Assembly: GCF_000150275.1 (NCBI RefSeq) | Contig: NW_002060965.1 | Coordinates: forward strand, 434,001 to 498,000 | Reading direction: 5' to 3' | DNA length: 64,000 nt | Source of the DNA: Trichoplax adhaerens | Taxonomy: Eukaryota; Animalia; Placozoa | Part shown: piece by piece, positions 28,745 to 53,531 of the stretch | Position numbering within the stretch: the first letter of the stretch is position 1 | Layout: every line of letters begins with the position of its first letter | The notes under the pieces: generated by a model | Database searches by the model: none | Told to the model about the DNA's origin: nothing | What the model saw: only the letters and a program-made list of their open reading frames with translations | Position numbers and translations under genes: made by a program

Positions 28745-31700
28745 TTAATCTGCCCCTTCTTCCGTGTTCTCCTGGTTTTCGTCGGTATTATTGGACAGTA
28801 GACATTGTTTAAATTTTTGTAAGGCTTTAAGGCATATTTTATCGTTTACAACTTCAAGCGCTTCCAATACCAAGTCAGTTAATATTTTAACATTTGGCGA
28901 ATTTAATTTATCAATTGAAAGCGAATTAAGCATTTTACACCACACGCGAAGTAAGGGTCCTTCGTGGTCAGATAAAATCTCGTTACAAATCTTAACAGCC
29001 AGATCGTCATGGACATTCACCAGATTTTCTATTGTCCGCTTTTCCTTTTGATGTTCCTGATTAGCTTGGAAAATGTGTAATGACGTCAAATGTGTCACTA
29101 ACTCTGCAACATTATTCGCATCAATATCTCGTAAAGCAGAATCATCAGGGGCATCAGCAATTGTGTGCAATGTAGGAAAGAATGCATCCAGTAGACATTG
29201 CTGATTTTCATTGCTATTTAGAGCGAAGGCTTGAAAGAAAACACCTAAGCAATGTCTTAGATGTAAGTCGTCCTCGGACGTTGGACTATACCACAGTAAC
29301 AGTAACCTTGAGATCAGCTTCGGACTAGATAATCGACCCGATAGAAGTAATTTGGCAAATCCCTCGGCTGCTACTTGTCTTATTTCGCCCAGTTCATTAT
29401 CTAAGAAACTTGTTAGAATCGCTAACAATTTACTGGAGGTATTGAGGTTATTCTCGTCTCCATTTTGTTGGTTACCGTCCGAAGTTTGTTCTGTGTCACT
29501 TTCGCTGCATATCTTAAATCCAAAAACATGTAGCAAGTCAAAGACAGCCTTCAGTGCCACTAGCCTCACTTCTAATTGATCTACTTGCATGATCTGTAGG
29601 AATAATATTAATTGAATGCGAGCCCGTTCCTTGTTAATGATGCTACACACACTAAGGCACTCAACAGCAACCTTGCGAATAACTGGATCTTCATTTTGTA
29701 CACTGGGCAATATCAAAGAATCCATTAGATCGTTAATAATTGGATGTACAGATGTCGATATTTCTGTTACATTTGCAAGCATTTCTTTAAATATCGACAG
29801 ACAACGATAGACAACTTCATTTTCATCTTGAGCTATAACTGTTTCAAACTCCGTAGCTTCGCAATCATCTTTCAATTGTGATTTCTGTTCCTCCAGTTCT
29901 TGTATCGATGATTTTATTTCACCTGCTGAGCTGAAATCTTCTTCAGCTACACATTCTTCTAATTTCTCTTTTAGTTCATTTATTTTAACTCGTAAACGTG
30001 CAATCTTGAGTTCCATTTGTCGGATTTCCTCTTTAGAATATTTCAATCTTGTAGAAACCAGAGGTTGACGAATATCAGATATGACTTCAGTAATTTCGGA
30101 AACATAATTTTTACAATCTGGTGATAGCTTCTGATATTGTTCCATCACAACAGGTAGTAGAGTTGGTAGTGAATTAAGTGCCATCATTTGCTCTTTTAAA
30201 AGTTTGCGAAAGTTCTTCCTGCCAACTTCATCAGTTAAATCCATTACTCCAGCAAGCATTAGTAACTGTTCCAATATGAATGCACGAGTTATAGTGGATT
30301 CTTCATCTTGCTTATCATACGGTAAAGCAATAAACCTTTTAATATATTCGCAAAATACCGATAATTCTGGTAGTATTTTATCTAAGTATTCCTCGCCATG
30401 ATTCTCGATACTATTTAAATGCTGTGTTAAACAGCGCCAATAAAGAACTATTTCACTAGTTACAGAGTCTTCTTTGGGGACCTTAGCTCTACCATAAACA
30501 ACGACATTAGCATCATTGCTGACAAGTGGAGCGATTAAATCTTCCAATGGAATATCCATAAAGAGCATATTTAACACAGATTGAATTGTCTTTGTGGCAT
30601 TTTCAACGTCTAAATGTTGTAATAGTACTAGGACATTACTGCCTAAACTCACTAACCAATTTGTCAATAGTTTACCCTTGCAGATGAGTTGGATACCTTT
30701 CGATCTATCTTTTAGGCCATTTTCTAATAAATCTAGTCGTTGATTAATTGTCAACGATTTAATACCCACTCTTTCAGCTAAGACTTGATAGGCGACACGT
30801 CGTACACTTTCCTTGATATCTTTAGTACGTTCAATAATTTCGGGTAAAGTAAGAGCATTGATTGCAATATTGGCAAGCACAGCACGGCGAACTTCGGCAC
30901 TGGAATCCTTGCTAATTAATTCAATATATTTTTTGATCACTATACAGTCTTCATCGGTTGGATCTTGTAGACGAGCAACTGCACGAACTGCTTGAATGCG
31001 TACAGCGGGTACTTTATCGTAAAGTCTTTCAAGCATGGCTTCGTATATTAAGTTATACAAATCATCATCAATTTGCGCATCTTCACTTAAATTATTGAGT
31101 AATTTGCAGACTAGTTGACAAGATCGATAGCGTATTCCACGATCCTGAGCTTGATTAATTGATAATAAAAACTGTAGTAAAAATATCATAAACTGATTGC
31201 TTCGCTCTTGTATTGCAGTTTGATCATCGTCATTTTCGTAGTCGCCGACTGTTTCAGTAGCAAATCTGGCAATAAAATCGATTAGTCTTTCAACAGCGGC
31301 TTCTTGCTTGAAAACGATTAAAATATGGCGTAAAGCAGCAACAAAATCTTGACAAAATTCTTCATATCCGTCGTCTCTTAGCTATAAAAGTATAGTAGTT
31401 TACAAAGTAAGTTAAAATTGTTAGTATAACAAGTTTTAATTTTAATTTATTTGTAAAGATGCCATCGTAAATCATTATCAAGGATAGAAGATCAAGTACG
31501 CTCTGGAATTTTTACGATTTATTCTTGCCGACTGGTTTACTAAGGTAATCAATGTTCTTTACTAATATTTAAATGTTATTCTTTCAATGATCAATGATGA
31601 GACAGTAATAGCAGGTAGAGTACTTTTAGTTGTATCTACTAGTAGATCTAAAACCAGTCACAATTCTTTCCAACCTGACTATTGCAAGAATTCTATATCT

Positions 31701-43398: not shown

Positions 43399-46300
43399 TC
43401 AATTTAAAGGAACAGACTTATTCGCCAATCGCCGAGATCGTCGAGATTGGACTGGTTGGCTGTCTGCACTATCTATATTACTAGATTTACTGTCATTATC
43501 CATGGATGATGACTCTTTTGTCGCAGTCAATAATTTTTTAACTTTCCGGGTTGCCTTAAGAACAGGTTTCCCTTCTTCACTACTGTCGTGGGTAGTATCA
43601 GATGTTCTTAAATTATCTTTTTTTTGCGTACGTCTTGATTTTCGTCCAGTAGTAGAAGCAGGAATTACATCCACAGTTACATTGTCACTACTAGAATCAT
43701 TAGGAGCTGCAGAACGAGTAGATGATCTAGTTTCACGTTTGATTACAGTTGACGATCTTGTTGATGTGCGGTTCTGACGTTCATCTTGACTATCATCACA
43801 GCTCTTACTATCCTTTCGACTCTTGCGTTTTGGCAGCACAAAGGCAGTAACCTTATCTTCTTCTTTTGCGATAGTACTGATGGCATGTGAGGTAACTGTA
43901 TTTACAGGAGCCTCTTCATTTACTTCAACTTGTTTATCAACGTCCTTACATAAATTTATTTTTTCATCATTACCAGCATTTGCTTCGTCAGCATTAGTTT
44001 CGCTTGCCAATTCACTTATATTTTCATTTATCTTACGGGCAGAACGACTTCTTTTTGACACTACTTTTTCAGATTGAATGCTTTCCTTACTTGTAGTTTC
44101 AGTGGTAGTTTTACATCCTTCTTCAGTTGCATTTTCATCTTTCCTACGTGCTAAACGAGTCTTTTTTGGCAAAATCTGATCAGATTGGATACTTTTGTTA
44201 ATTGTTTGTTGCTCAAGAATTTTACTTTTTGTACGAGTTGCTCTTGCATTACTCCTTTTAACGGGCTCTGGCTCCTTTTCGACTAACTTTTTCTGTCGCA
44301 AATTTCTTGTACTTGTTGGATGATCGCTCACGCCTTCTTTAACAGCTTCTCGCTTTGGAGTAAGTTTGGTAGTTTTATTTTCTAACCTTACCTCTAAATC
44401 AATTACATTCTTTCCATCAGGTGTAACTGAGCACTCAGAATCCGCTTTCTTTGTTGATACAATTTTTCGTTTCCTACTAATTCTAGTAGGCTTGCCGTTT
44501 TCTACAACTGCTGCTGCCGTATTATCAGAATCTAGGGTCATATTTTTATGATTTGCGTCTATAATATTGGTTGAAGATGTATGGTCTACTTCTCCCAAAT
44601 CATAAATCAAATTAGTTTTATTCTCTTTGTTAGTATCGCGAATAACCTTTTTACTTTTCCTTCCTTTTGCAACGATATCCGGTGATGACAAATCATTTTT
44701 CTTACAACTTGACGTTTCACTTTCAGATAATTCAGTTATAGGTGTCATCAAAACTACGTTATTCCATAGTTTTTGTTCAACTTGTTCGCTTTTGTAAAGA
44801 CGTTTCGTAGCCTTATGATTGTTTTTCTTTAATTTTTTCATTCTTGGTTCTTCAGTAACTGCATCGTTTATTTTACGCTTACCACCAGTGCGTATTAACG
44901 TTGAGGTTGAATCTTCACTGCTAATGACATTATTTGTAATATCAGGGTTAGTTGACTTGACCTTACGTGAACTTGTTCGCCTTGAGTTAGTCGCTTTACT
45001 TCTGGTGCTTTTGGGTGCACGCTTGCATCGCAATGTGGAATTCTTAAGAGTAGTGGCTGTCTCAACGTTCTTTGGTGATGTATTGATTTGCTTACTTTCA
45101 GAAAGTACTATTTCATCTCTTTTAGTGTCAAGGCTAACATGCCCTTTGTGAGTCTCGGTATCTATAAAATCTGCAGTTGTTGATGTTTTAGAAGTCGGAC
45201 TTGTATTTTCAACCGTATTTTGTTGATCATGCTCACTAATATAAGTAGAGCTGTTAAATAAATCCGCCAATTCAGTCATAAATTCATTAGTAGTCTCATT
45301 GGAGTCTTTAGGTAATTGAAATAGTTCTTTTAATCCTTTGTAGATAGTTTCTTGTTGACTTGCTGATGTATGTACTCCAGATGGTAATGTAAATAATCGC
45401 GGTAATAAACCAACTTCAACACTGTAACGAGCACTTTTCTTATTACTACGTGGCGTTTTTAAGAGTCTTTTCAACCCTTTCAAGCATTGATCTTTACTCA
45501 CATCTCCTTTACCTTGCTTAGAAAGTGGCGTATTTGCTATTTCCTTCAATGCAAACAAAATATTATCCCGTTCAGCTATACTTTGTGCACTCAATTTGGC
45601 GCGAGGAGTTTTCAGCAAATATCCCAAAGATTTCAAGGCTTCATCTTGATTATTCATTTCTTGTTCATTTACCTTAGGGCTGTGTTCGCAAGTCATTTCT
45701 GCCATTAATGGCTCGCTAATCGCAGCAGCATGTTCGCAAATTTCAGAACTTTTATCTGAAATTGGTTCAAGGTGATCTTGTAAGTTGTAGATTGTAATCT
45801 CGCCATCGTTTAATGCATCTGCATTCACACTATTTATTGACTCATTCTTATCCTGTTGCATAATAGGTACAGTTTCTATCTCGGGAGAATTAGCTATTTT
45901 ATGTGAGCTGGGCATCTCAAACATTTGTTGAAGACCATCAAAAACTGGTTCAAGTGATGTATTCTTGGCACGTTTGGGTGTTTTAAACCATTGTTCAAGA
46001 ACAGATAAATATTCATCTGAAAATTGACTTTTCAATTTAGGTGTTTTAAGCAGTCTCTGTAATCCATCATATGCGGGTTCTAACGACGGATCCCTCTTAC
46101 TTTTAGGTGTTTTCAACCATTGCTTCAAAGCTAGCAAGTTCTCACTACACGAATTATTTTTAAGCCTTGGTGTTGTAAAGATATCTTGTAGACCCTCAAT
46201 GTTACTTTCTTCGAGAGATACTTTAGCTGGTGTTTGCATGATATTATTTTCTTCTGAATTGGATACATCCATTGCAGTTATCTCACTAGTAGATATAGTT

Positions 46301-49300
46301 TTGATATTTCTCTTAGGAGAATTCATGACTTGTAGACCTTCAATGTTACTTTCTTCGAGAGATACTTTAGCTGGTGTTTGCATGATGTTATTTTCTTCTG
46401 AATTGGATACATCCATTACAGTTATCTCACTAGTAGGCGTAGTTATGATATTTCTCTCAGAAGAATTAATGACCTTTAGTGAGCTAGGTGTCTCAAATAA
46501 TTGTTGAAGATCATCGAAAACTGGTTCCAGTGATGTATTTTTGGTACGTTTTGGTGTTTTAAACCATTGTTTAAGAACAGACAAATATTCATCTGAAAAT
46601 TGATTTTTCAATTTAGGTGTTTTAAGCAATCTTTGTAATTCATTATATACTGGTTCTAGTGATGGATCCCTCTTACTTTTGGGTGTTTTCAACCACTGTT
46701 TTAAAACTAGCAAGTTCTCATCGGACGAATTATTTTTAAATCTTGGTGTTTTAAAAAGATCTTGTAGACCGTCGATGTCACCCTCTTCAAACGATACTTT
46801 AGCTGGTGTTTGCATTACATAAGAATTTTCTTCAAAATTGGATAAGTTCATGGAAGTCTCGTTATTAGTGAGTATAGTATTATTATCCATCTCAAGAGAA
46901 TCAGCAAATTTTACCGGGCTAGGTGTTCTAAATAATTGCTGAAGGCCGTCGAAAATAGGTTCAAGTGACGTATTTTCAGCACGCTTTGGTGATTTAAACC
47001 ATTGCTTAACAGTAGATAGATATTCATCTGAAAACTGGTTTTTGAACTTAGGTGTTTTAAGCAGTCTTTTCAGTCCATCATACATCGGCTCTACTGCTGG
47101 ATCTCGTTTACTCTTTGGAGTTTTCAACCATTGCTTTAGTACCTGCAAATTCTCCTTACACAAATTATTGTTTAATTTTGGTGTTTCATTGGGATCTTGC
47201 AGACCTTTAATGTAACTTTCGTTGAGAGACACCTTAGCTGGTGTTTGCATGATATCATTACTTTCTTCTGAATAAGTTGTATCTATTGGAGTTATCACTT
47301 TGGTCAGTACAACTTTGCCTTCCATTTCGGGAGAATCGGCAATTTTAAGTAAGCTGGGTGTCTCGAATAACTTCTGAAGACCATCAAAAACTGGTTCAAG
47401 TGGTGTACATTTTGAGCCTTTTGGTGTTTTAAACCATTGTTTCAGAACAGATAAACATTCATCTGAAAATTGACTTTTCAATTTAGGTGTTTTAAGCAGT
47501 CTTTGTAATTCATCAAATACTGGCTTTAGCGATGGATCTCTCTTACTTTTAGGTGTTTTCAACCATTGTTTTAGAGTTGACAAGTTCTCATTACGCGAAC
47601 TATTATTAAATGCTGGTGTTTTAAAAAGATCTTGTAAACCTTCAATATTGCTTTCTTCGAGAGATACTTTAGCTGGTGTTTGCCTAAGATGAATACTTTC
47701 TTCCAAATTAGATGTATCCATTGCCGTCATCTCACTATCGAGTGTAGTTTTAATTTCTGTCTCTGCAGAGTCAGCGACTTTTAGTGAGCTAGGTGTCTCA
47801 AATAATTGTTGGAGACCATCAAAAACTGGCTCAAGCGATTTATTTCTGACACTTCTTGGTGTTTTAAACCATTGCTTAAGAGTAGATAAATACTCATCTG
47901 AAAATCGGCTTTTCAATTTAGGCGTTTTCAGCAGTCTTTGTAATCCATCATACACTGGCTCCATTGCGGGATCTCTTTTACTCTTTGGTGTTTTTAACCA
48001 CTGCTTTAAAACTAATAAATTCTCATTACCGGAATTATGCTTCAAGCTTGGCGTCTTAAAGAGATTTTGTAAACCTTCAACATCATTCTCGTTAAAACTT
48101 GTTTTCGCTGGCGTTTGCATTTGATATGAAGTTTCTTCAGAATTGGATATTTCTAATGAGGTTACCTCATTCATTGGAGAGGCAATATTCTTAGAAAAAA
48201 TAGGTGTCTGGAATAATTCTCGAATTCCATCTACTACGGGTTCCAGCGGAGGATTTTTAGCACCTTTGGGAGTTTTATACCAATGCTTTAATACATGCAA
48301 ATATTCATCTGAAATTTTTCGGTCTATCTTAGAGGATTTTAGTAACTTTTGTAAACCATCGTAAGCAGGTTCCATAGTAATATCTCTTTGATTTTTGGGT
48401 GTCTTAAGCCATTCTTTTAAAACAAGCAAATTCTCATCAGAAGATTTACCTCTAAACTTTGGCGTTTTAAAGAGATTTTGCAATCCTTCCAAATCATAAT
48501 CTGAAGGCAAAGTTTTAACAGGAGTTTGATTATAAATCGAATTCCTTAGTAGATTATTAGACTTTATTGCTTCACTTGTTGTTTGCACTTTGCTTTCATC
48601 AACAGCAATTGTTGTCTTGTCAGCATTATCTAATTGCTCAGTAATGGCTTGATCATTATTATTAATAGGAACCGATTCCTGTAACGAATCAACGCTAACT
48701 GATTCATATTCTGATCCATTTTGATACTTGTCTTGATTAATGGAATTTACCGATGATGACCTAAAACTGCTTCTTTTAGCTGTATTAGCTCTAAATGTTC
48801 CTGCTATTAAGTTATCATCACCACGTCTACCACCTATGGTGGGTATCCAATGATTACTATCACGCCTTGGTTTAATAAGTGGCTGATCACTATCAACAGT
48901 AGTAAACTGGCATTCTTTCTTATTGAGATTGCTAATACTGCCTAATTGCAAATCGTCTTGAACAGAGACTATGTCCCCTTGAACTTTCGTAGGTATATCA
49001 ACTATTAAAAAAGATACATTTCCAGCATTAGACTTTATTTTATTTGTCCATCGAATTATATATTATACATCTAAAGTAGCTCTGTACTATTTCTATCGTT
49101 TATGTGAATAGCCTTACCTCTTTCTTGATTTTGGGACTGAGATGTATTGCCTTCATATTCATCTTCATTCGTATCATGAACGCTGCTCAGATTTGATTGA
49201 TTAATGGACCTTGCTTCAATAATAAGGCCATTTGGTGTTACGAAAGTTGGAGTTGACATTAATAAATTGATTGGATTTTGTTGCGCTTTACCAATCTCAT

Positions 49301-52138
49301 ATGCTGGAGTCATGCATTGTTGCTGATTGACTTCAATAGGAGTATTTTTTTCATCTGTTGAGCTGCTGCTACTACTACTATTTAGCAATGTTGATAAGGA
49401 AGATTCATATAATGTCTTACTGTTTTTTTTCATTGAGCTTTTCGATCGACGTTTATTTGTTGGAGTGTTTATTGGTGTTTTACAAACATTGTTGGTTTCA
49501 GTGGTAGAATTAGGTTGAATCATTTTTTCAGTTGAAGTAGCAACATTATTATTAATAATAAGCTGGTGATTCAGTTTATCGGTGTTTGGCGTGGCGAAGA
49601 GATCTTTAATCAAGTGATGAGCTTCTGCAAAGCACCTATCTGGTGTTGAGTTTTCCATCTCCTGGAATGCGAATTAAATATCAATATGACATTCCCATAT
49701 CATGACTGTTTCGTTTATAATAATATAATTAATTAATATAAGGTTAAACTGCTATAATAGAAAGACTTACCGATGGTACAGATTGAGGAACGTCATTATC
49801 TTGATTATTATCATTACAGATATCTTGACTAGCTTTGTTTTGCTGAGATGAACGCCTCTTTCGAGTATCTTTCTTCCACAATCCAGTAATCATTATATCA
49901 TCGCTTCTTTTATCACACAAAGTAGGTACCCAGGCGTTGCTACGTCGTTTAACACTACTTTTATCGCAAATTTTCTGCCGTCTTGAAGTTTCAGCTGAAT
50001 GTCGTCTCGTTATTATATTGGTTCGAAATGACCTGCGTTTAGTAATACACGGGTCATCATTTTGAGATACCGCTGTAAATTTCAATTCCGGATCCAAAGA
50101 ATTAGCCATAGAGATTTGACTTGAGTTATTATCGTTTGGATGATTTGTTGTTGCTGAAGATCTAGTTTCTATATTATCTTCCGCTTTATCTTGATGATTT
50201 GATTCTTGCAAGGAAACTAGGTCATTACTATCGAAAGTTAGCGTAGAAACGATATCAACTAAACTATTGCTTTCCTTTTCATCTTCATCGAGAGCAATTA
50301 CAGAGGGAGTTTTAAGTATCGATCTACGTTTGCTATGACTCTTTACTTTACCAGCAGAAGGCATTGGAGTATAAACTGGTTTTCTACCTCGCTTTACAGG
50401 AGTATCAGTCGGATTTTTCTTACTATATAATTCAGGACTTAAATGCGGTCCAAATGTTACACTTTTTCGATTCCTTTTCGGTGCAAAGAATTCATCAACC
50501 GTCTTCATTAGACTATCAACAGAAGTAATATCATTCAGAATCCTCTTTTCTGGAGTTTTCGAACGAACATTTGCAGATCCATCATTATTTTGGCTATTGC
50601 TCTGTTCAGTCTTTTTTTCAGCAGTAGTATTATTAGCTGGAAAGGATGTTGATGAGCGTCTTCCTCTAGATCGGCGATTTTTAATTTTACCATCTAATCG
50701 AAAGCTATCATCCATGCTTTGATCTGAAGTGGACACCTTGCTATCACCGTGATCTTTCATTAATTGGTCATTGCTAAGAAGTGTGTTAATCTCAGAGATC
50801 AATATTTGCTTGCTGCTTACACTCCGATGTTAACGAATCATTTCGTAGGGTAAGGACAATATCAATTTGATCTTGCTTCTTACTGTCCGTATCGTCTACG
50901 AAGCTTTCTTCTAACTTAAAACTTCTTCTCCTAATTTGTTTGAGTTTCTTAGCTGAAAGCTGTTGTTGACATTCCAAGCCAGGTATTAAGATGCCAGTAT
51001 TTCTGTCTCCTTGACCTGAGATATTCTCCTTGTCATCGATGGCATCCTAGACGTATAGCACAATCAGTCATAATGCATTACATTAGTTGGCTCAATTTTT
51101 AGCAAAACTTGATATAAATATCTATATGCTATGAGTACATTAATTTGTTTATTTCTATCAGATAGTCAAAAAAGAACATACGCAATACAGTACAATCACG
51201 TTCAATCTGAATGGTCCAGAATAAGAGCGTACGTATATTACTTGATTTGACGAAAGATGATCACTATTTTGTTATTTGTTTATAAAATGATGGCTACGAA
51301 TCAATATATATTTATCCAATCATCTTATATATTTACCTGCTTGTTAGGTGTATCTATTATGATGTCACTTTTTTTGTATAGAAAGGTTTTATTGCCAATT
51401 TTAATCTTAGTACCATCTTTTATTCGACATTGCCTCTGTAAGAGGGCTTCACCGGCTACATGGATCTGTGCTGAAGGTTGTAAACGCTCTATCCAAGCCT
51501 GCATGTGTTTGACATTGATAAAAATAAATTAAAGGTAAAGAATTAGAAAATATTTTGTGATACGCGTATATATCGATTCTACAGTTACTTTATCTTAACT
51601 ACAGTAATAATGATTGTCTATTTATGATAAGCCACTTTTATAACATGTTGAATTCAAAATTGATTTTACTGTGCATACGTCTATGATGATATCAAGGCGA
51701 CGAACATTTATATTTTTATCATTCTGTCGTAGCACTGTACAATACTGTACATTAGTAGCCTTACAATTGACTATTTAGCATCATGGTGTATTTGACATGG
51801 TACATCACCTTGTTGTTGGTGTCGATGAATACTCTCGCATGTTGATTCTGAACACTGGCATTACGAATACGAATATCGCAGTTGTCGTCGCTACAATGTG
51901 GATATATTTAATAAATGATTATATAATTATTAATTGTACGCGTATATATTTAAGCTTGATTTTATTCGAGGTTATTAAGATGCAAATAAAGCTGTTTCCA
52001 AGAAATAATTGACTGAACATACCTGCCAAAAATGCTTTGCTTATCAATTAATGGCACTTTAGATCCCTCAGTTCCGTTTCTTCGAATCAAGACAACGTTA
52101 CCATATTTACCTGCACTATTGAATGAGGACTGTTCCAT
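43399..52138 (-). CDS. MKI67: Ki-67-like protein (~2561 aa): FHA domain, PP1-binding motif, KTP repeats, basic disordered tail
   Basis: Seven phase-compatible exons: 52138-52023, 51890-51809, 51498-51337, 51046-50821, 50723-49771, 49661-49118 and 49001-43399 (7686 nt). N-terminal FHA (VVLIRRNGTEG...IFG...CDIRI...QHARV), a KEN box (DKENI), PP1 motif RKSVTFGPHLSPELY...TPVKRG (50386-50469) and repeated GLQxLFKTP/ELFQTP motifs. Confidence 0.85.
45900..48530 (-). repeat. Coding higher-order repeat, 6 units of ~145 aa (~435 bp), plus a 144-bp internal duplication
   Basis: QTP(A/V)K unit starts near 48525, 48120, 47682, 47250, 46815 and 46383/46239. Confidence 0.92.
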
Positions 52139-52725
52139 AGTTTCTGCGTCCAGTGAAGAAAAGAACAATACTGTACTTTAACCAAATGATTAGGATTGTT
52201 TGTAAAATGGTGATCAATAGAACCATCGGATACATATCCGTATCGAGTAAAAATACTGGCACTAGTACAATATAAAGCAGTTGCTAAACTAGGACTGTTG
52301 TAGCTGATAATTAATAAGAGAAACTGGTCAAATTTTATTTAAAAGTTTTAAATTTCAATTTCCTTAAGCCTCAACGTGGATAGAATGAATTTCAATTTGG
52401 CCATTTTTCTTACCCGTTAAACGATGATTAATCAAGGGATGAGCGATTGGATGGATTAATGAAGTTGACAAGGACGAGTTGTCTGCTTTGCACGACTATT
52501 TGGTTAACTTTAGTATTCAAATAATGGCACTGCAGGTCGCTAAACTATAAAATCAACTAACCGCTAGCAAAGCTATCTTGACTAGAAGTGGTTTATTAAC
52601 CTTGCGTCGACAAGATCAATCTGACTAACAGTAATTATGATTGCCCCACGATGGTTGTTTTAGGTTATATAGCTTACCGGTCAGATTCGGTTCAGCCCCC
52701 TTGGCAGCAGTTGCATTCCATCGAT

Positions 52726-52801
52726 CAACGGCCGATCAGTTGCGTATTTGAAAATTTAAATTTTTAGTATCCAATGAAAGTGCAGTATCTCAATGACGTC
52801 A
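52726..52801 (-). promoter_or_regulatory. Putative promoter of the Ki-67-like gene (MYB-like, CHR, CCAAT, CRE)
   Basis: CAACGG at 52726, TTTGAA at 52747, TTTAAA at 52755, CCAAT at 52771 and TGACGTCA at 52794. A candidate 5'UTR intron 52677-52144 has a GTAAGC donor and a pyrimidine-rich CAG acceptor 5 nt before the ATG. Confidence 0.5.
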
Positions 52802-53531
52802 AGAGATGACTGCCTGACTTGTTGCAGTGCGTCCAGATGTCATTCTGTCACTGTCCAGGAGACTGGACTGCGAAAAAGAAAATCTCGCTAGTACCATAGT
52901 ACGGTACCGGTACTCGTGTACTAGGCTATAATAATCGACCATTATTATTATTATTATTATTAGTCTACAGTCTACACTCAGTCTACAGTAGTGTACTGTA
53001 CAGTACTGTACAGTATAAGAAATTTTCAAAGAAAAAAATGACTTAATAATGTGGTTAAAAGTAAGCAAAACATCATGGACCTTTTAATGAACTCAACTTA
53101 TGCTGAGGACTATCTTTAAGCAGAAATCTTTCCAAAAAATAAGCGATTTCATTCATACCTTTTTAGACTAATGAATAGTGCTAGAACTGTTGGATAATGT
53201 CCATCTTGTGCGTCAATCAAGGACGGTTCGTTCGGGACCAGTTCCACACCGAGCAAAATTGACTGCATAGTTCATAATAATTAATTAATTAATTAATTAA
53301 ATTAAGGAGCTTAAGGTTATGATAATCGATTGATGAGGAACTGGAGCCAATTTGAAAGTAAAGGCCTGAAAAATTAAATGGATGATCTAATTAAAGGCAG
53401 CACTATATAGCTGAACACACAGAATTTGAGCTTTCAACCAGCATAGAGAGCTCGCAACATTCCTGAAATAGTGGTCCGATACTATAATATTTTTGATATT
53501 TCTATGGGTCCGATAGAAGGAAAAGTCTGTT

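What the first reader, a model, noticed from the sequence alone, without database searches (positions are those of the whole stretch)
43399..52138. Complete Ki-67 architecture in an apparently non-vertebrate, possibly placozoan genome
Seen: an FHA domain, a KEN box, a Ki-67/Repo-Man-type PP1 motif (SVTFG.HLSPELY...TPVKRG), many FKTP/LFQTP repeats and a basic tail, in human MKI67 domain order. The repeats sit in one giant 5.6-kb exon and the ATG follows a candidate non-coding first exon. The first two FHA introns (phase 2 after FG-x, phase 0 after the next exon) appear to match my recollection of human MKI67. Established: Ki-67 is often described as vertebrate- or chordate-restricted. Inference: the perichromosomal-layer and PP1-recruiting system may date to early animals.
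Basis: partly seen in the sequence, partly recalled or inferred. Interest (0 to 1): 0.8.

Follow-up and report, generated by a model that had tools for sequence, protein, structure and literature searches.

The report
Trichoplax Ki-67 gene, already published
This is the Ki-67 gene of the simple marine animal Trichoplax, with the same parts in the same order as vertebrate Ki-67, but a Trichoplax Ki-67 was already listed in a 2014 paper and a 2026 preprint, so it is a sound re-discovery rather than a new find.

Summary
On the minus strand, 52138 to 43399, six coding exons encode about 2,593 residues. In order they give an N-terminal FHA domain, a Ki-67/Repo-Man PP1-binding motif (Pfam PP1_bind, 34.9 bits against a cut-off of 27), six units of about 145 residues built from 21-22-residue "KTP" sub-motifs, and a basic tail (pI 9.9).

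The repeats and tail lie in one 5,603-base exon. The genome is Trichoplax, 99.2% identical to Trichoplax sp. H2, whose annotated protein joins the same exons.

The Ki-67 reading is supported:
- The only significant FHA structure match is human Ki-67.
- All 47 non-self hits to the FHA-PP1 region are vertebrate Ki-67.
- The repeats match fish Ki-67 repeats at 127 bits, against 27 bits at most for shuffled sequence.
- Two FHA introns share position and phase with a teleost MKI67.

It is not new. Booth et al. 2014 aligned a Trichoplax Ki-67 (UniProt B3SB24), and a June 2026 preprint includes Trichoplax among its candidates.

Caveats I add:
- The window has one extra base at 50797 that breaks the frame relative to H2.
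- The canonical phosphothreonine-contacting residues of the FHA are replaced.
- The tail shows no sequence similarity to the vertebrate LR domain.
- The KEN box is no more than chance.

The scan also noted this repeat in another finding (s1-746146).

The parts
52023..52138 (-). Coding exon 1: ATG at 52138 and the first FHA strands. It ends FG + AG|GT, a phase-2 intron.
   Evidence: Sequence read. Identical to the H2 exon. Same intron position and phase as the teleost MKI67.
51809..51890 (-). Coding exon 2: FHA middle part with the CDIRI motif, ending in a phase-0 intron.
   Evidence: Its only PDB hit is the human Ki-67 FHA, 2AFF, at E 1.6, which is not significant alone. The intron position equals the teleost one.
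51337..51498 (-). Coding exon 3: C-terminal half of the FHA.
   Evidence: In the H2 protein P0001, whose three FHA exons are identical in nucleotide sequence, Pfam FHA scores 34.1 bits against a cut-off of 20.7. Human Ki-67 FHA is the best PDB match at E 2e-5.
49771..51046 (-). Coding exon 4: a KEN tripeptide near its start and the PP1-binding module (RVxF-type KSVTF plus the downstream Ki-67/Repo-Man motif). The frame is broken in this assembly by an extra C at 50797.
   Evidence: PP1_bind 34.9 bits. PDB matches to Repo-Man and Ki-67 PP1 peptides. One continuous exon in H2. The indel is listed.
49118..49661 (-). Coding exon 5: a disordered Ser/Thr/Asn-rich linker with 8 S/T-P sites.
43399..49001 (-). 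Coding exon 6, 5,603 bases including the stop: the repeat region and the basic tail.
45856..48531 (-). Six Ki-67-type repeat units of about 145 residues, plus a 48-residue partial duplicate at 46240-46383. Each unit is built from 21-22-residue sub-motifs that end in K/E-T-P.
   Evidence: TRF period 435. Motif spacing. Units and alignment A1. 127 bits to fish Ki-67 repeats against 27 at most for shuffles. phmmer E 1.2e-29.
43399..45051 (-). Basic Lys/Arg/Ser/Thr-rich C-terminal tail, the last 550 residues plus the stop codon.
   Evidence: pI 9.90 and net charge +39. No similarity to the vertebrate C-terminus beyond shuffles: 25.8 bits against a shuffled maximum of 29.3.
52139..52860 (-). Upstream region that should hold the promoter and a non-coding first exon. 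The splice acceptor lies 5 bases before the ATG, and a candidate donor CCG|GTAAGC lies near 52689.
   Evidence: Sequence. The H2 model uses the same acceptor. No transcript data were available, so this is unverified.

Best explanation
This is the single-copy Ki-67 (MKI67) orthologue of Trichoplax, either T. adhaerens or a genome 99% identical to Trichoplax sp. H2.

By homology it most likely works as vertebrate Ki-67 does. The basic C-terminal tail would anchor it on chromatin. The long disordered middle is rich in CDK-type T-P sites (66 S/T-P in all, 43 of them in the repeats) and would form the phospho-regulated brush, or surfactant layer, on mitotic chromosomes. The N-terminal KSVTF...LSPEL...TPVKRG module would recruit PP1 at mitotic exit, switched by the flanking S-P and T-P sites.

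What is shown: the gene structure, the domains, their order, and the similarity to vertebrate Ki-67. What is inferred: PP1 binding, chromosome coating and cell-cycle regulation.

The FHA keeps the Ki-67-type sequence signature, but the residues that normally hold phosphothreonine are replaced, so it may not bind phospho-NIFK in the canonical way.

The existence of this gene is already in the literature.
For: Organism and gene model:
- The region is 99.17% identical over 13 kb to Trichoplax sp. H2.
- The genome is 105.6 Mb in 1,414 contigs.
- The H2 protein TrispH2_003568 (P0001, 2,651 aa) joins the same exons.

Domains:
- Pfam FHA scores 34.1 bits and PP1_bind 30.5 bits on P0001.
- PP1_bind scores 34.9 bits on the window's own exon.

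Ki-67 specificity:
- Human Ki-67 FHA (2AFF, 1R21) is the best structure hit at 24.8 bits; the next FHA scores 11.6 bits.
- All 47 non-self hits to residues 62-420 are vertebrate Ki-67 with FHA, KI67R and PP1_bind.
- The repeat exon hits fish Ki-67 at E 1.2e-29, BLASTP 1e-31, and 127 bits against a shuffled maximum of 27.

Gene structure:
- FHA introns 1 (phase 2, in the codon after FG) and 2 (phase 0) are at the same places as in Prochilodus MKI67.
- The repeats lie in one giant exon, as the review PMC8354752 says is always the case.

Selection and copy number:
- pN/pS between this genome and H2 is 0.34.
- There is only one PP1_bind locus in the genome, so no separate Repo-Man.

Prior publication:
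- Booth et al. 2014 list Ki_Triad, UniProt B3SB24.
- The 2026 preprint lists Trichoplax adhaerens among its candidates.
Against: - Pfam KI67R (PF08065) does not hit the repeats.
- The FHA alone finds nothing at E <= 1 in the 5.8-billion-protein set. Exon by exon, only exon 2 touches Ki-67, at E 1.6.
- The canonical FHA residues GR..SxxH..N..N read GS..QxxH..A..A here.
- No hNIFK_binding motif (PF12196) was found in the genome.
- The tail has no sequence similarity to the LR domain.
- The window has a frame-breaking extra base at 50797.
- I had no transcript or protein data.
Confidence: 0.9

Rival explanations
1. In this particular genome the gene is a recently inactivated pseudogene. The extra C at 50797 truncates the protein after the FHA, at about 200 residues.
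For: Relative to H2 the window has a one-base insertion that gives a stop at 50794-50792. I found no short intron with a compatible phase that would skip it; the GTAAGC..TAG candidate is 47 bases with the wrong phase (sequence). The genome holds only one copy of the region.
Against: The remaining 7.4 kb of coding sequence downstream is fully open. It differs from H2 by only 23 substitutions, and pN/pS over the whole coding sequence is 0.34. A single-base error in a draft assembly is the simpler explanation.
Confidence: 0.12
2. The locus holds two genes, a small FHA protein and a separate PP1-binding repeat protein, which gene models fuse by mistake.
For: No transcript evidence was available here. 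The frame break at 50797 lies between the FHA and the PP1 motif. The preprint describes just such a split annotation for Ciona in UniProt.
Against: All junctions are canonical and in phase. H2 has one continuous exon across the break. The order FHA, PP1 motif, repeats equals that of vertebrate Ki-67. There is no start context or promoter-sized gap between the parts.
Confidence: 0.04
3. It is a convergent look-alike: a disordered TP-rich repeat protein with an unrelated FHA and a generic RVxF motif, not a Ki-67 orthologue.
For: The FHA is weakly similar (24.8 bits) and lacks the canonical binding residues. Pfam KI67R does not hit. RVxF motifs are short.
Against: Three independent modules each have Ki-67 or its paralogue Repo-Man as best match. 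The PP1 match extends about 35 residues beyond RVxF. Two intron positions and phases are shared with a teleost MKI67. The single giant repeat exon is shared too.
Confidence: 0.03

Closest known systems
Vertebrate Ki-67 (MKI67; human P46013, teleost and bird orthologues)
   Same: - An N-terminal Ki-67-type FHA with the CDIRI motif.
- A PP1-binding module downstream of the FHA.
- Tandem repeats with a TP-to-TP sub-motif about 22 residues long, like the human 'Ki-67 motif'.
- Repeats in one giant exon.
- Many S/T-P sites, overall pI about 9, and a basic C-terminus.
- Two FHA introns at the same position and phase as in a teleost.
   Different: - Six units of about 145 residues, against 16 of 122 in human.
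- Pfam KI67R does not recognise them.
- FHA residues R, S, N and N of the GRSHNN set are replaced by S, Q, A and A.
- The tail is Lys/Ser/Thr-rich with no detectable similarity to the Leu/Arg-rich LR domain.
- The third FHA intron is displaced.
- About 2,593 residues, against 3,256 in human.
Repo-Man (CDCA2)
   Same: The PP1-binding module. The best PDB match of the motif is in fact Repo-Man (26.7 bits, against 22.4 for Ki-67). It includes the LSPE and TP sites that act as a mitotic phospho-switch in Repo-Man.
   Different: Repo-Man has no FHA and no Ki-67 repeats. Booth et al. 2014 call Ki-67 'ancestral to' Repo-Man and mark the vertebrate branches in their Figure 1A3 tree; that Repo-Man is a vertebrate-only offshoot is my reading. 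This genome has a single PP1_bind locus, so the gene would be the pro-orthologue of both as far as this module goes.
Non-vertebrate Ki-67 homologues (Booth et al. 2014: Ciona, Saccoglossus, Hydra, Trichoplax B3SB24; preprint 10.64898/2026.06.18.733134: Ciona, Drosophila CG42232, sponges, molluscs and others)
   Same: This is the Trichoplax member of that published set: large, disordered and basic, with an N-terminal FHA, a PP1 motif, repeats and S/T-P sites.
   Different: The preprint states that non-vertebrate homology would be unidentifiable without the FHA. Here it is the repeats that give the strongest match to vertebrate Ki-67 (E 1e-29), and the FHA alone is weak. Neither paper's text mentions introns or exons.

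Membership tests
Ki-67 (MKI67) | N-terminal FHA domain of the Ki-67 type | tested here: met
   Pfam FHA scores 34.1 bits (cut-off 20.7) on H2 protein P0001, whose FHA exons are identical in nucleotide sequence to the window's. Human Ki-67 FHA is the top PDB hit at 24.8 bits; the next FHA scores 11.6. Exon by exon the pieces are too short to score.
Ki-67 (MKI67) | Canonical phosphothreonine-binding residues of the FHA (GR, SxxH, N, N) used to bind NIFK | tested here: not met
   An alignment with 11 vertebrate Ki-67 FHAs shows GR>GS, SKEH>QNQH, NPT>AQI and VNG>VAG. PF12196 hNIFK_binding was not found in the genome, which is weak evidence.
Ki-67 (MKI67) | PP1-binding RVxF plus the extended Ki-67/Repo-Man motif (Pfam PF15276) downstream of the FHA | tested here: met
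   34.9 bits against a cut-off of 27 on the window's exon. 37.3 bits in the genome scan, the only locus found. The alignment to the 5INB and 5J28 peptides covers about 35 residues.
Ki-67 (MKI67) | Tandem Ki-67 repeats containing the Ki-67 motif | tested here: inconclusive
   Pfam KI67R PF08065 gives no hit. Direct comparison with fish Ki-67 repeat regions gives E 1.2e-29 and 1e-31, and 127 bits against 27 for shuffles. The 21-22-residue TP-to-TP periodicity resembles the 22-residue human motif quoted in PMC8354752. I read this as homologous, though it fails the curated model.
Ki-67 (MKI67) | Repeat region encoded in one very large exon | tested here: met
   Exon 49001-43399, 5,603 bases. The review states that the region is always in a single exon.
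Ki-67 (MKI67) | C-terminal LR (Leu/Arg-rich) chromatin-binding domain | tested here: inconclusive
   The tail is strongly basic (pI 9.9, net +39). It scores 25.8 bits to vertebrate Ki-67, no better than shuffles.
Ki-67 (MKI67) | Shared intron positions with vertebrate MKI67 | tested here: met
   Introns 1 and 2 of the FHA are at the same codon and phase as in Prochilodus MKI67 locus L002; intron 3 differs. The human gene was not fetched.
Ki-67 (MKI67) | Proliferation-linked expression and perichromosomal localisation in mitosis | not testable with these tools
   No expression or imaging data. A CCAAT plus CHR-like pair upstream is no more frequent than chance.
Repo-Man (CDCA2) | PP1_bind motif in a protein without an FHA and without Ki-67 repeats | tested here: not met
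   The motif is present, but the protein also has an FHA and repeats, so it is not a Repo-Man-type protein.

The most novel reading that the evidence does not exclude
The placozoan Ki-67 keeps the PP1 module and the TP-repeat brush but carries an FHA that has lost all three ligand-contacting residues of the phosphothreonine pocket, and the genome shows no NIFK Ki-67-binding motif. If so, the conserved core of Ki-67 function in early animals is PP1 recruitment plus the phospho-regulated disordered brush. The FHA-NIFK link would then be either a later addition or dispensable. A further point runs against the 2026 preprint's statement: the repeats, not the FHA, are the best-conserved sequence between placozoan and vertebrate Ki-67.
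Probability: 0.45. Interest if true: 0.3.

Novelty: already known. Interest (0 to 1): 0.18.

Why it matters
Ki-67 is often called vertebrate-specific. A placozoan orthologue shows that the FHA, PP1-motif and repeat protein dates to early animals. That conclusion was already drawn by Booth et al. 2014 and is extended by a 2026 preprint.

This check adds detail only:
- an exon map;
- two intron positions shared with a teleost;
- clear sequence homology of the repeats;
- a degenerate FHA pocket;
- two annotation problems: a frame break in this assembly, and a doubtful 58-residue N-terminal extension in the H2 model.

Tried and rejected
- **Pfam, exon by exon.** The FHA exons gave nothing because they are too short. 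PDB searches of the three exons gave only Ki-67 at E 1.6 for exon 2.
- **Joining exons.** Whole-protein statements rest on the database protein P0001 from Trichoplax sp. H2.
- **FHA-only word search.** It found no relative at E <= 1.
- **Large representative search and complex prediction.** Not used, because the family was not in doubt.
- **Short intron to bypass the frame break at 50797.** The only good donor and acceptor pair gives 47 bases with the wrong phase. Rejected.
- **The H2 model's upstream start.** Its ATG is GTG in this genome, so I reject it as the conserved start.
- **CCAAT plus CHR-like promoter pair.** 4 found against 3.4 expected. Rejected as evidence.
- **KEN box.** 3 found against 1.43 expected. 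Rejected as evidence.
- **Human MKI67 gene structure.** Not fetched or compared. A teleost stood in for it.
Full report
**What is there.** The window is AT-rich eukaryotic DNA of about 32% GC. It corresponds to G000 contig C1392:434001-498000, in a genome of 105.6 Mb in 1,414 contigs. The 13 kb around the finding are 99.17% identical to a contig of Trichoplax sp. H2, GCA_003344405.1. The organism is therefore Trichoplax, most likely T. adhaerens.

**Gene structure.** I mapped the H2 protein TrispH2_003568 (P0001, 2,651 aa) onto its own locus and onto the window. The coding exons on the minus strand of the window are:

| Exon | Coordinates | Content |
|---|---|---|
| E1 | 52138-52023 | ATG, start of the FHA |
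| E2 | 51890-51809 | FHA, middle part |
| E3 | 51498-51337 | FHA, C-terminal half |
| E4 | 51046-49771 | KEN tripeptide, PP1 motif |
| E5 | 49661-49118 | disordered linker |
| E6 | 49001-43399 | repeats, tail, stop codon (5,603 bases) |

All borders are GT..AG and the phases agree. Statements about the whole protein rest on P0001, whose E1-E3 are identical to the window's in nucleotide sequence.

**Two annotation problems.**
- The window has an extra C at 50797 that H2 lacks. In H2, E4 is one open exon of 1,275 bases. In the window the frame shifts and meets a stop at 50794-50792. The rest of the gene is open, and it differs from H2 by 11 synonymous and 14 non-synonymous changes (pN/pS 0.34). 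The genome holds only one copy of the region. A base error in one assembly is the simplest reading; a very recent inactivation cannot be excluded.
- The H2 model adds 58 residues from two upstream exons, but its ATG reads GTG in this genome. It aligns with the N-terminus of vertebrate Ki-67. The acceptor 5 bases before it implies an upstream, probably non-coding, exon, which I could not verify.

**Domains.** Pfam finds PP1_bind on the window's own exon at 34.9 bits, cut-off 27. On P0001 it finds FHA at 34.1 bits (cut-off 20.7) and PP1_bind at 30.5 bits.
- The PP1 motif aligns over about 35 residues with the solved PP1-bound peptides of Repo-Man (5INB, E 4.5e-5) and Ki-67 (5J28, E 9e-4). The alignment includes the S-P and T-P sites next to the RVxF-type KSVTF.
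- The genome has only this one PP1_bind locus, so there is no separate Repo-Man. The T. adhaerens protein B3SB24 that Booth et al. aligned by this motif should therefore be this gene. That is an inference, because I could not retrieve the accession.

**Is the FHA of the Ki-67 type?** In the PDB, the human Ki-67 FHA (2AFF, 1R21) is the only significant FHA hit, at 24.8 bits and E 2e-5. The next FHA scores 11.6 bits. All 47 non-self hits to residues 62-420 of P0001 are fish or bird Ki-67.
- The FHA alone is weak. It finds nothing at E <= 1 in the 5.8-billion-protein set, and the single exons do not score.
- The alignment with 11 vertebrate Ki-67 FHAs shows that the conserved set GR, SxxH, N, N reads GS, QxxH, A, A. 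From established FHA knowledge, the Arg, Ser and first Asn contact the phosphopeptide, while Gly and His are structural. The fold signature is kept but the canonical pocket is not.
- The NIFK motif that binds the Ki-67 FHA (PF12196) was not found in the genome. This is weak evidence.

**Repeats.** TRF finds a 435-base period. I delimited six units of 128-145 residues, plus a 48-residue partial duplicate. They align with 75% mean column identity.
- Each unit holds a QTP motif at its start and five further sub-motifs of the form hydrophobic-x-x-L-hydrophobic-K/E-T-P, spaced 20-22 residues apart.
- [KEQ]TP occurs 37 times against 2.4 expected.
- Pfam KI67R does not hit.
- The region nevertheless matches fish Ki-67 repeat regions: phmmer E 1.2e-29, BLASTP 1e-31, and 127 bits against a maximum of 27 bits for shuffled queries.
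- The TP-to-TP spacing recalls the 22-residue human Ki-67 motif quoted in the review PMC8354752. The same review says the repeat region is always in a single exon, as it is here.

**Tail and composition.** The last 550 residues have pI 9.9 and a net charge of +39. The protein from Met59 of P0001 has pI 9.0 and 66 S/T-P sites, 17 of them with K/R at +3. The tail has no sequence similarity to vertebrate Ki-67 beyond shuffles. 'LR domain' is therefore an analogy by charge only. KEN occurs three times against 1.43 expected (p = 0.17).

**Introns.** I did not fetch the human gene. In the teleost Prochilodus MKI67 locus (L002), reading the DNA shows two things:
- Intron 1 splits the codon after FG in phase 2 (GGA AG|GT ... 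AG|G).
- Intron 2 follows the eleventh residue after the conserved His, in phase 0.

Both are exactly as in Trichoplax. The third FHA intron is at a different place. The deposited fish model mis-splices intron 1, and I read the canonical sites from the sequence.

**How it probably works.** The architecture and the homology are shown. The mechanism is inferred from vertebrate Ki-67 (PMC4032110, PMC8354752):
- The basic tail sits on chromatin.
- The disordered repeat region is phosphorylated at its many T-P sites by mitotic CDK and acts as a repulsive brush on mitotic chromosomes.
- The KSVTF module recruits PP1 at mitotic exit, gated by the neighbouring S-P and T-P sites.
- The role of the FHA is open, given its altered pocket.

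**Novelty.** Booth et al. 2014 (PMC4032110, Figure 1A3) aligned Ki-67 family members from Trichoplax adhaerens (B3SB24), Hydra, Saccoglossus and Ciona, and called Ki-67 ancestral to Repo-Man. The preprint 10.64898/2026.06.18.733134 reports Ki-67 homologues across animal phyla and lists Trichoplax among its candidates. Its text contains neither 'intron' nor 'exon'. The finding is a correct re-discovery. The scan also noted the higher-order repeat separately (s1-746146).

**Not done.**
- No spliced joining of the window's exons.
- No structure or complex prediction and no large representative search.
- No comparison with the human gene.

Noticed in passing
window 50797 (minus-strand gene, exon 4): An extra C relative to Trichoplax sp. 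H2 breaks the Ki-67 reading frame and gives a stop at 50794-50792. It is probably an assembly error in one of the two genomes, or otherwise a very recent frameshift.
   Followed up: partly
window 53247; L003:10001: The start codon of the H2 gene model TrispH2_003568 is ATG in H2 but GTG here. The 58-residue N-terminal extension of that model is probably spurious, and the ATG at 52138 is the real start.
   Followed up: partly
window 28745-31189 (-): A single 814-residue open exon encodes a condensin I subunit of the NCAPG/Cnd3 type (Pfam Cnd3, 264 bits, plus HEAT repeats). It lies about 12 kb from the Ki-67 gene on the same strand. Two mitotic-chromosome genes are therefore neighbours.
   Followed up: partly
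window 52957-53011 and 53293-53300: Upstream of the gene, ACAGT/TACTG-type short repeats and an AT-rich stretch carry the only larger indels between this genome and H2 (15, 13 and 8 bases). Everything else is 99% identical.
   Followed up: no
window 52747-52775 (-), with TGACGTCA near 52800: An inverted CCAAT box, a TTCAAA (CHR-like) element and a CRE-like palindrome sit just upstream of the candidate first exon. The CCAAT-CHR pairing is not more frequent than chance in this window (4 against 3.4 expected).
   Followed up: yes
window 46185-46473: A 144-base segment is tandemly duplicated at 93% identity, which adds a 48-residue partial repeat unit. The H2-window alignment shows no gap at this place, so H2 appears to carry it too.
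   Followed up: partly
L002:3001-4760 (Prochilodus magdalenae MKI67): The deposited fish gene model mis-splices FHA intron 1, using non-canonical sites that add about 20 spurious residues. The canonical GT..AG sites restore the usual FGR-KLDCDIRIQ junction.
   Followed up: yes
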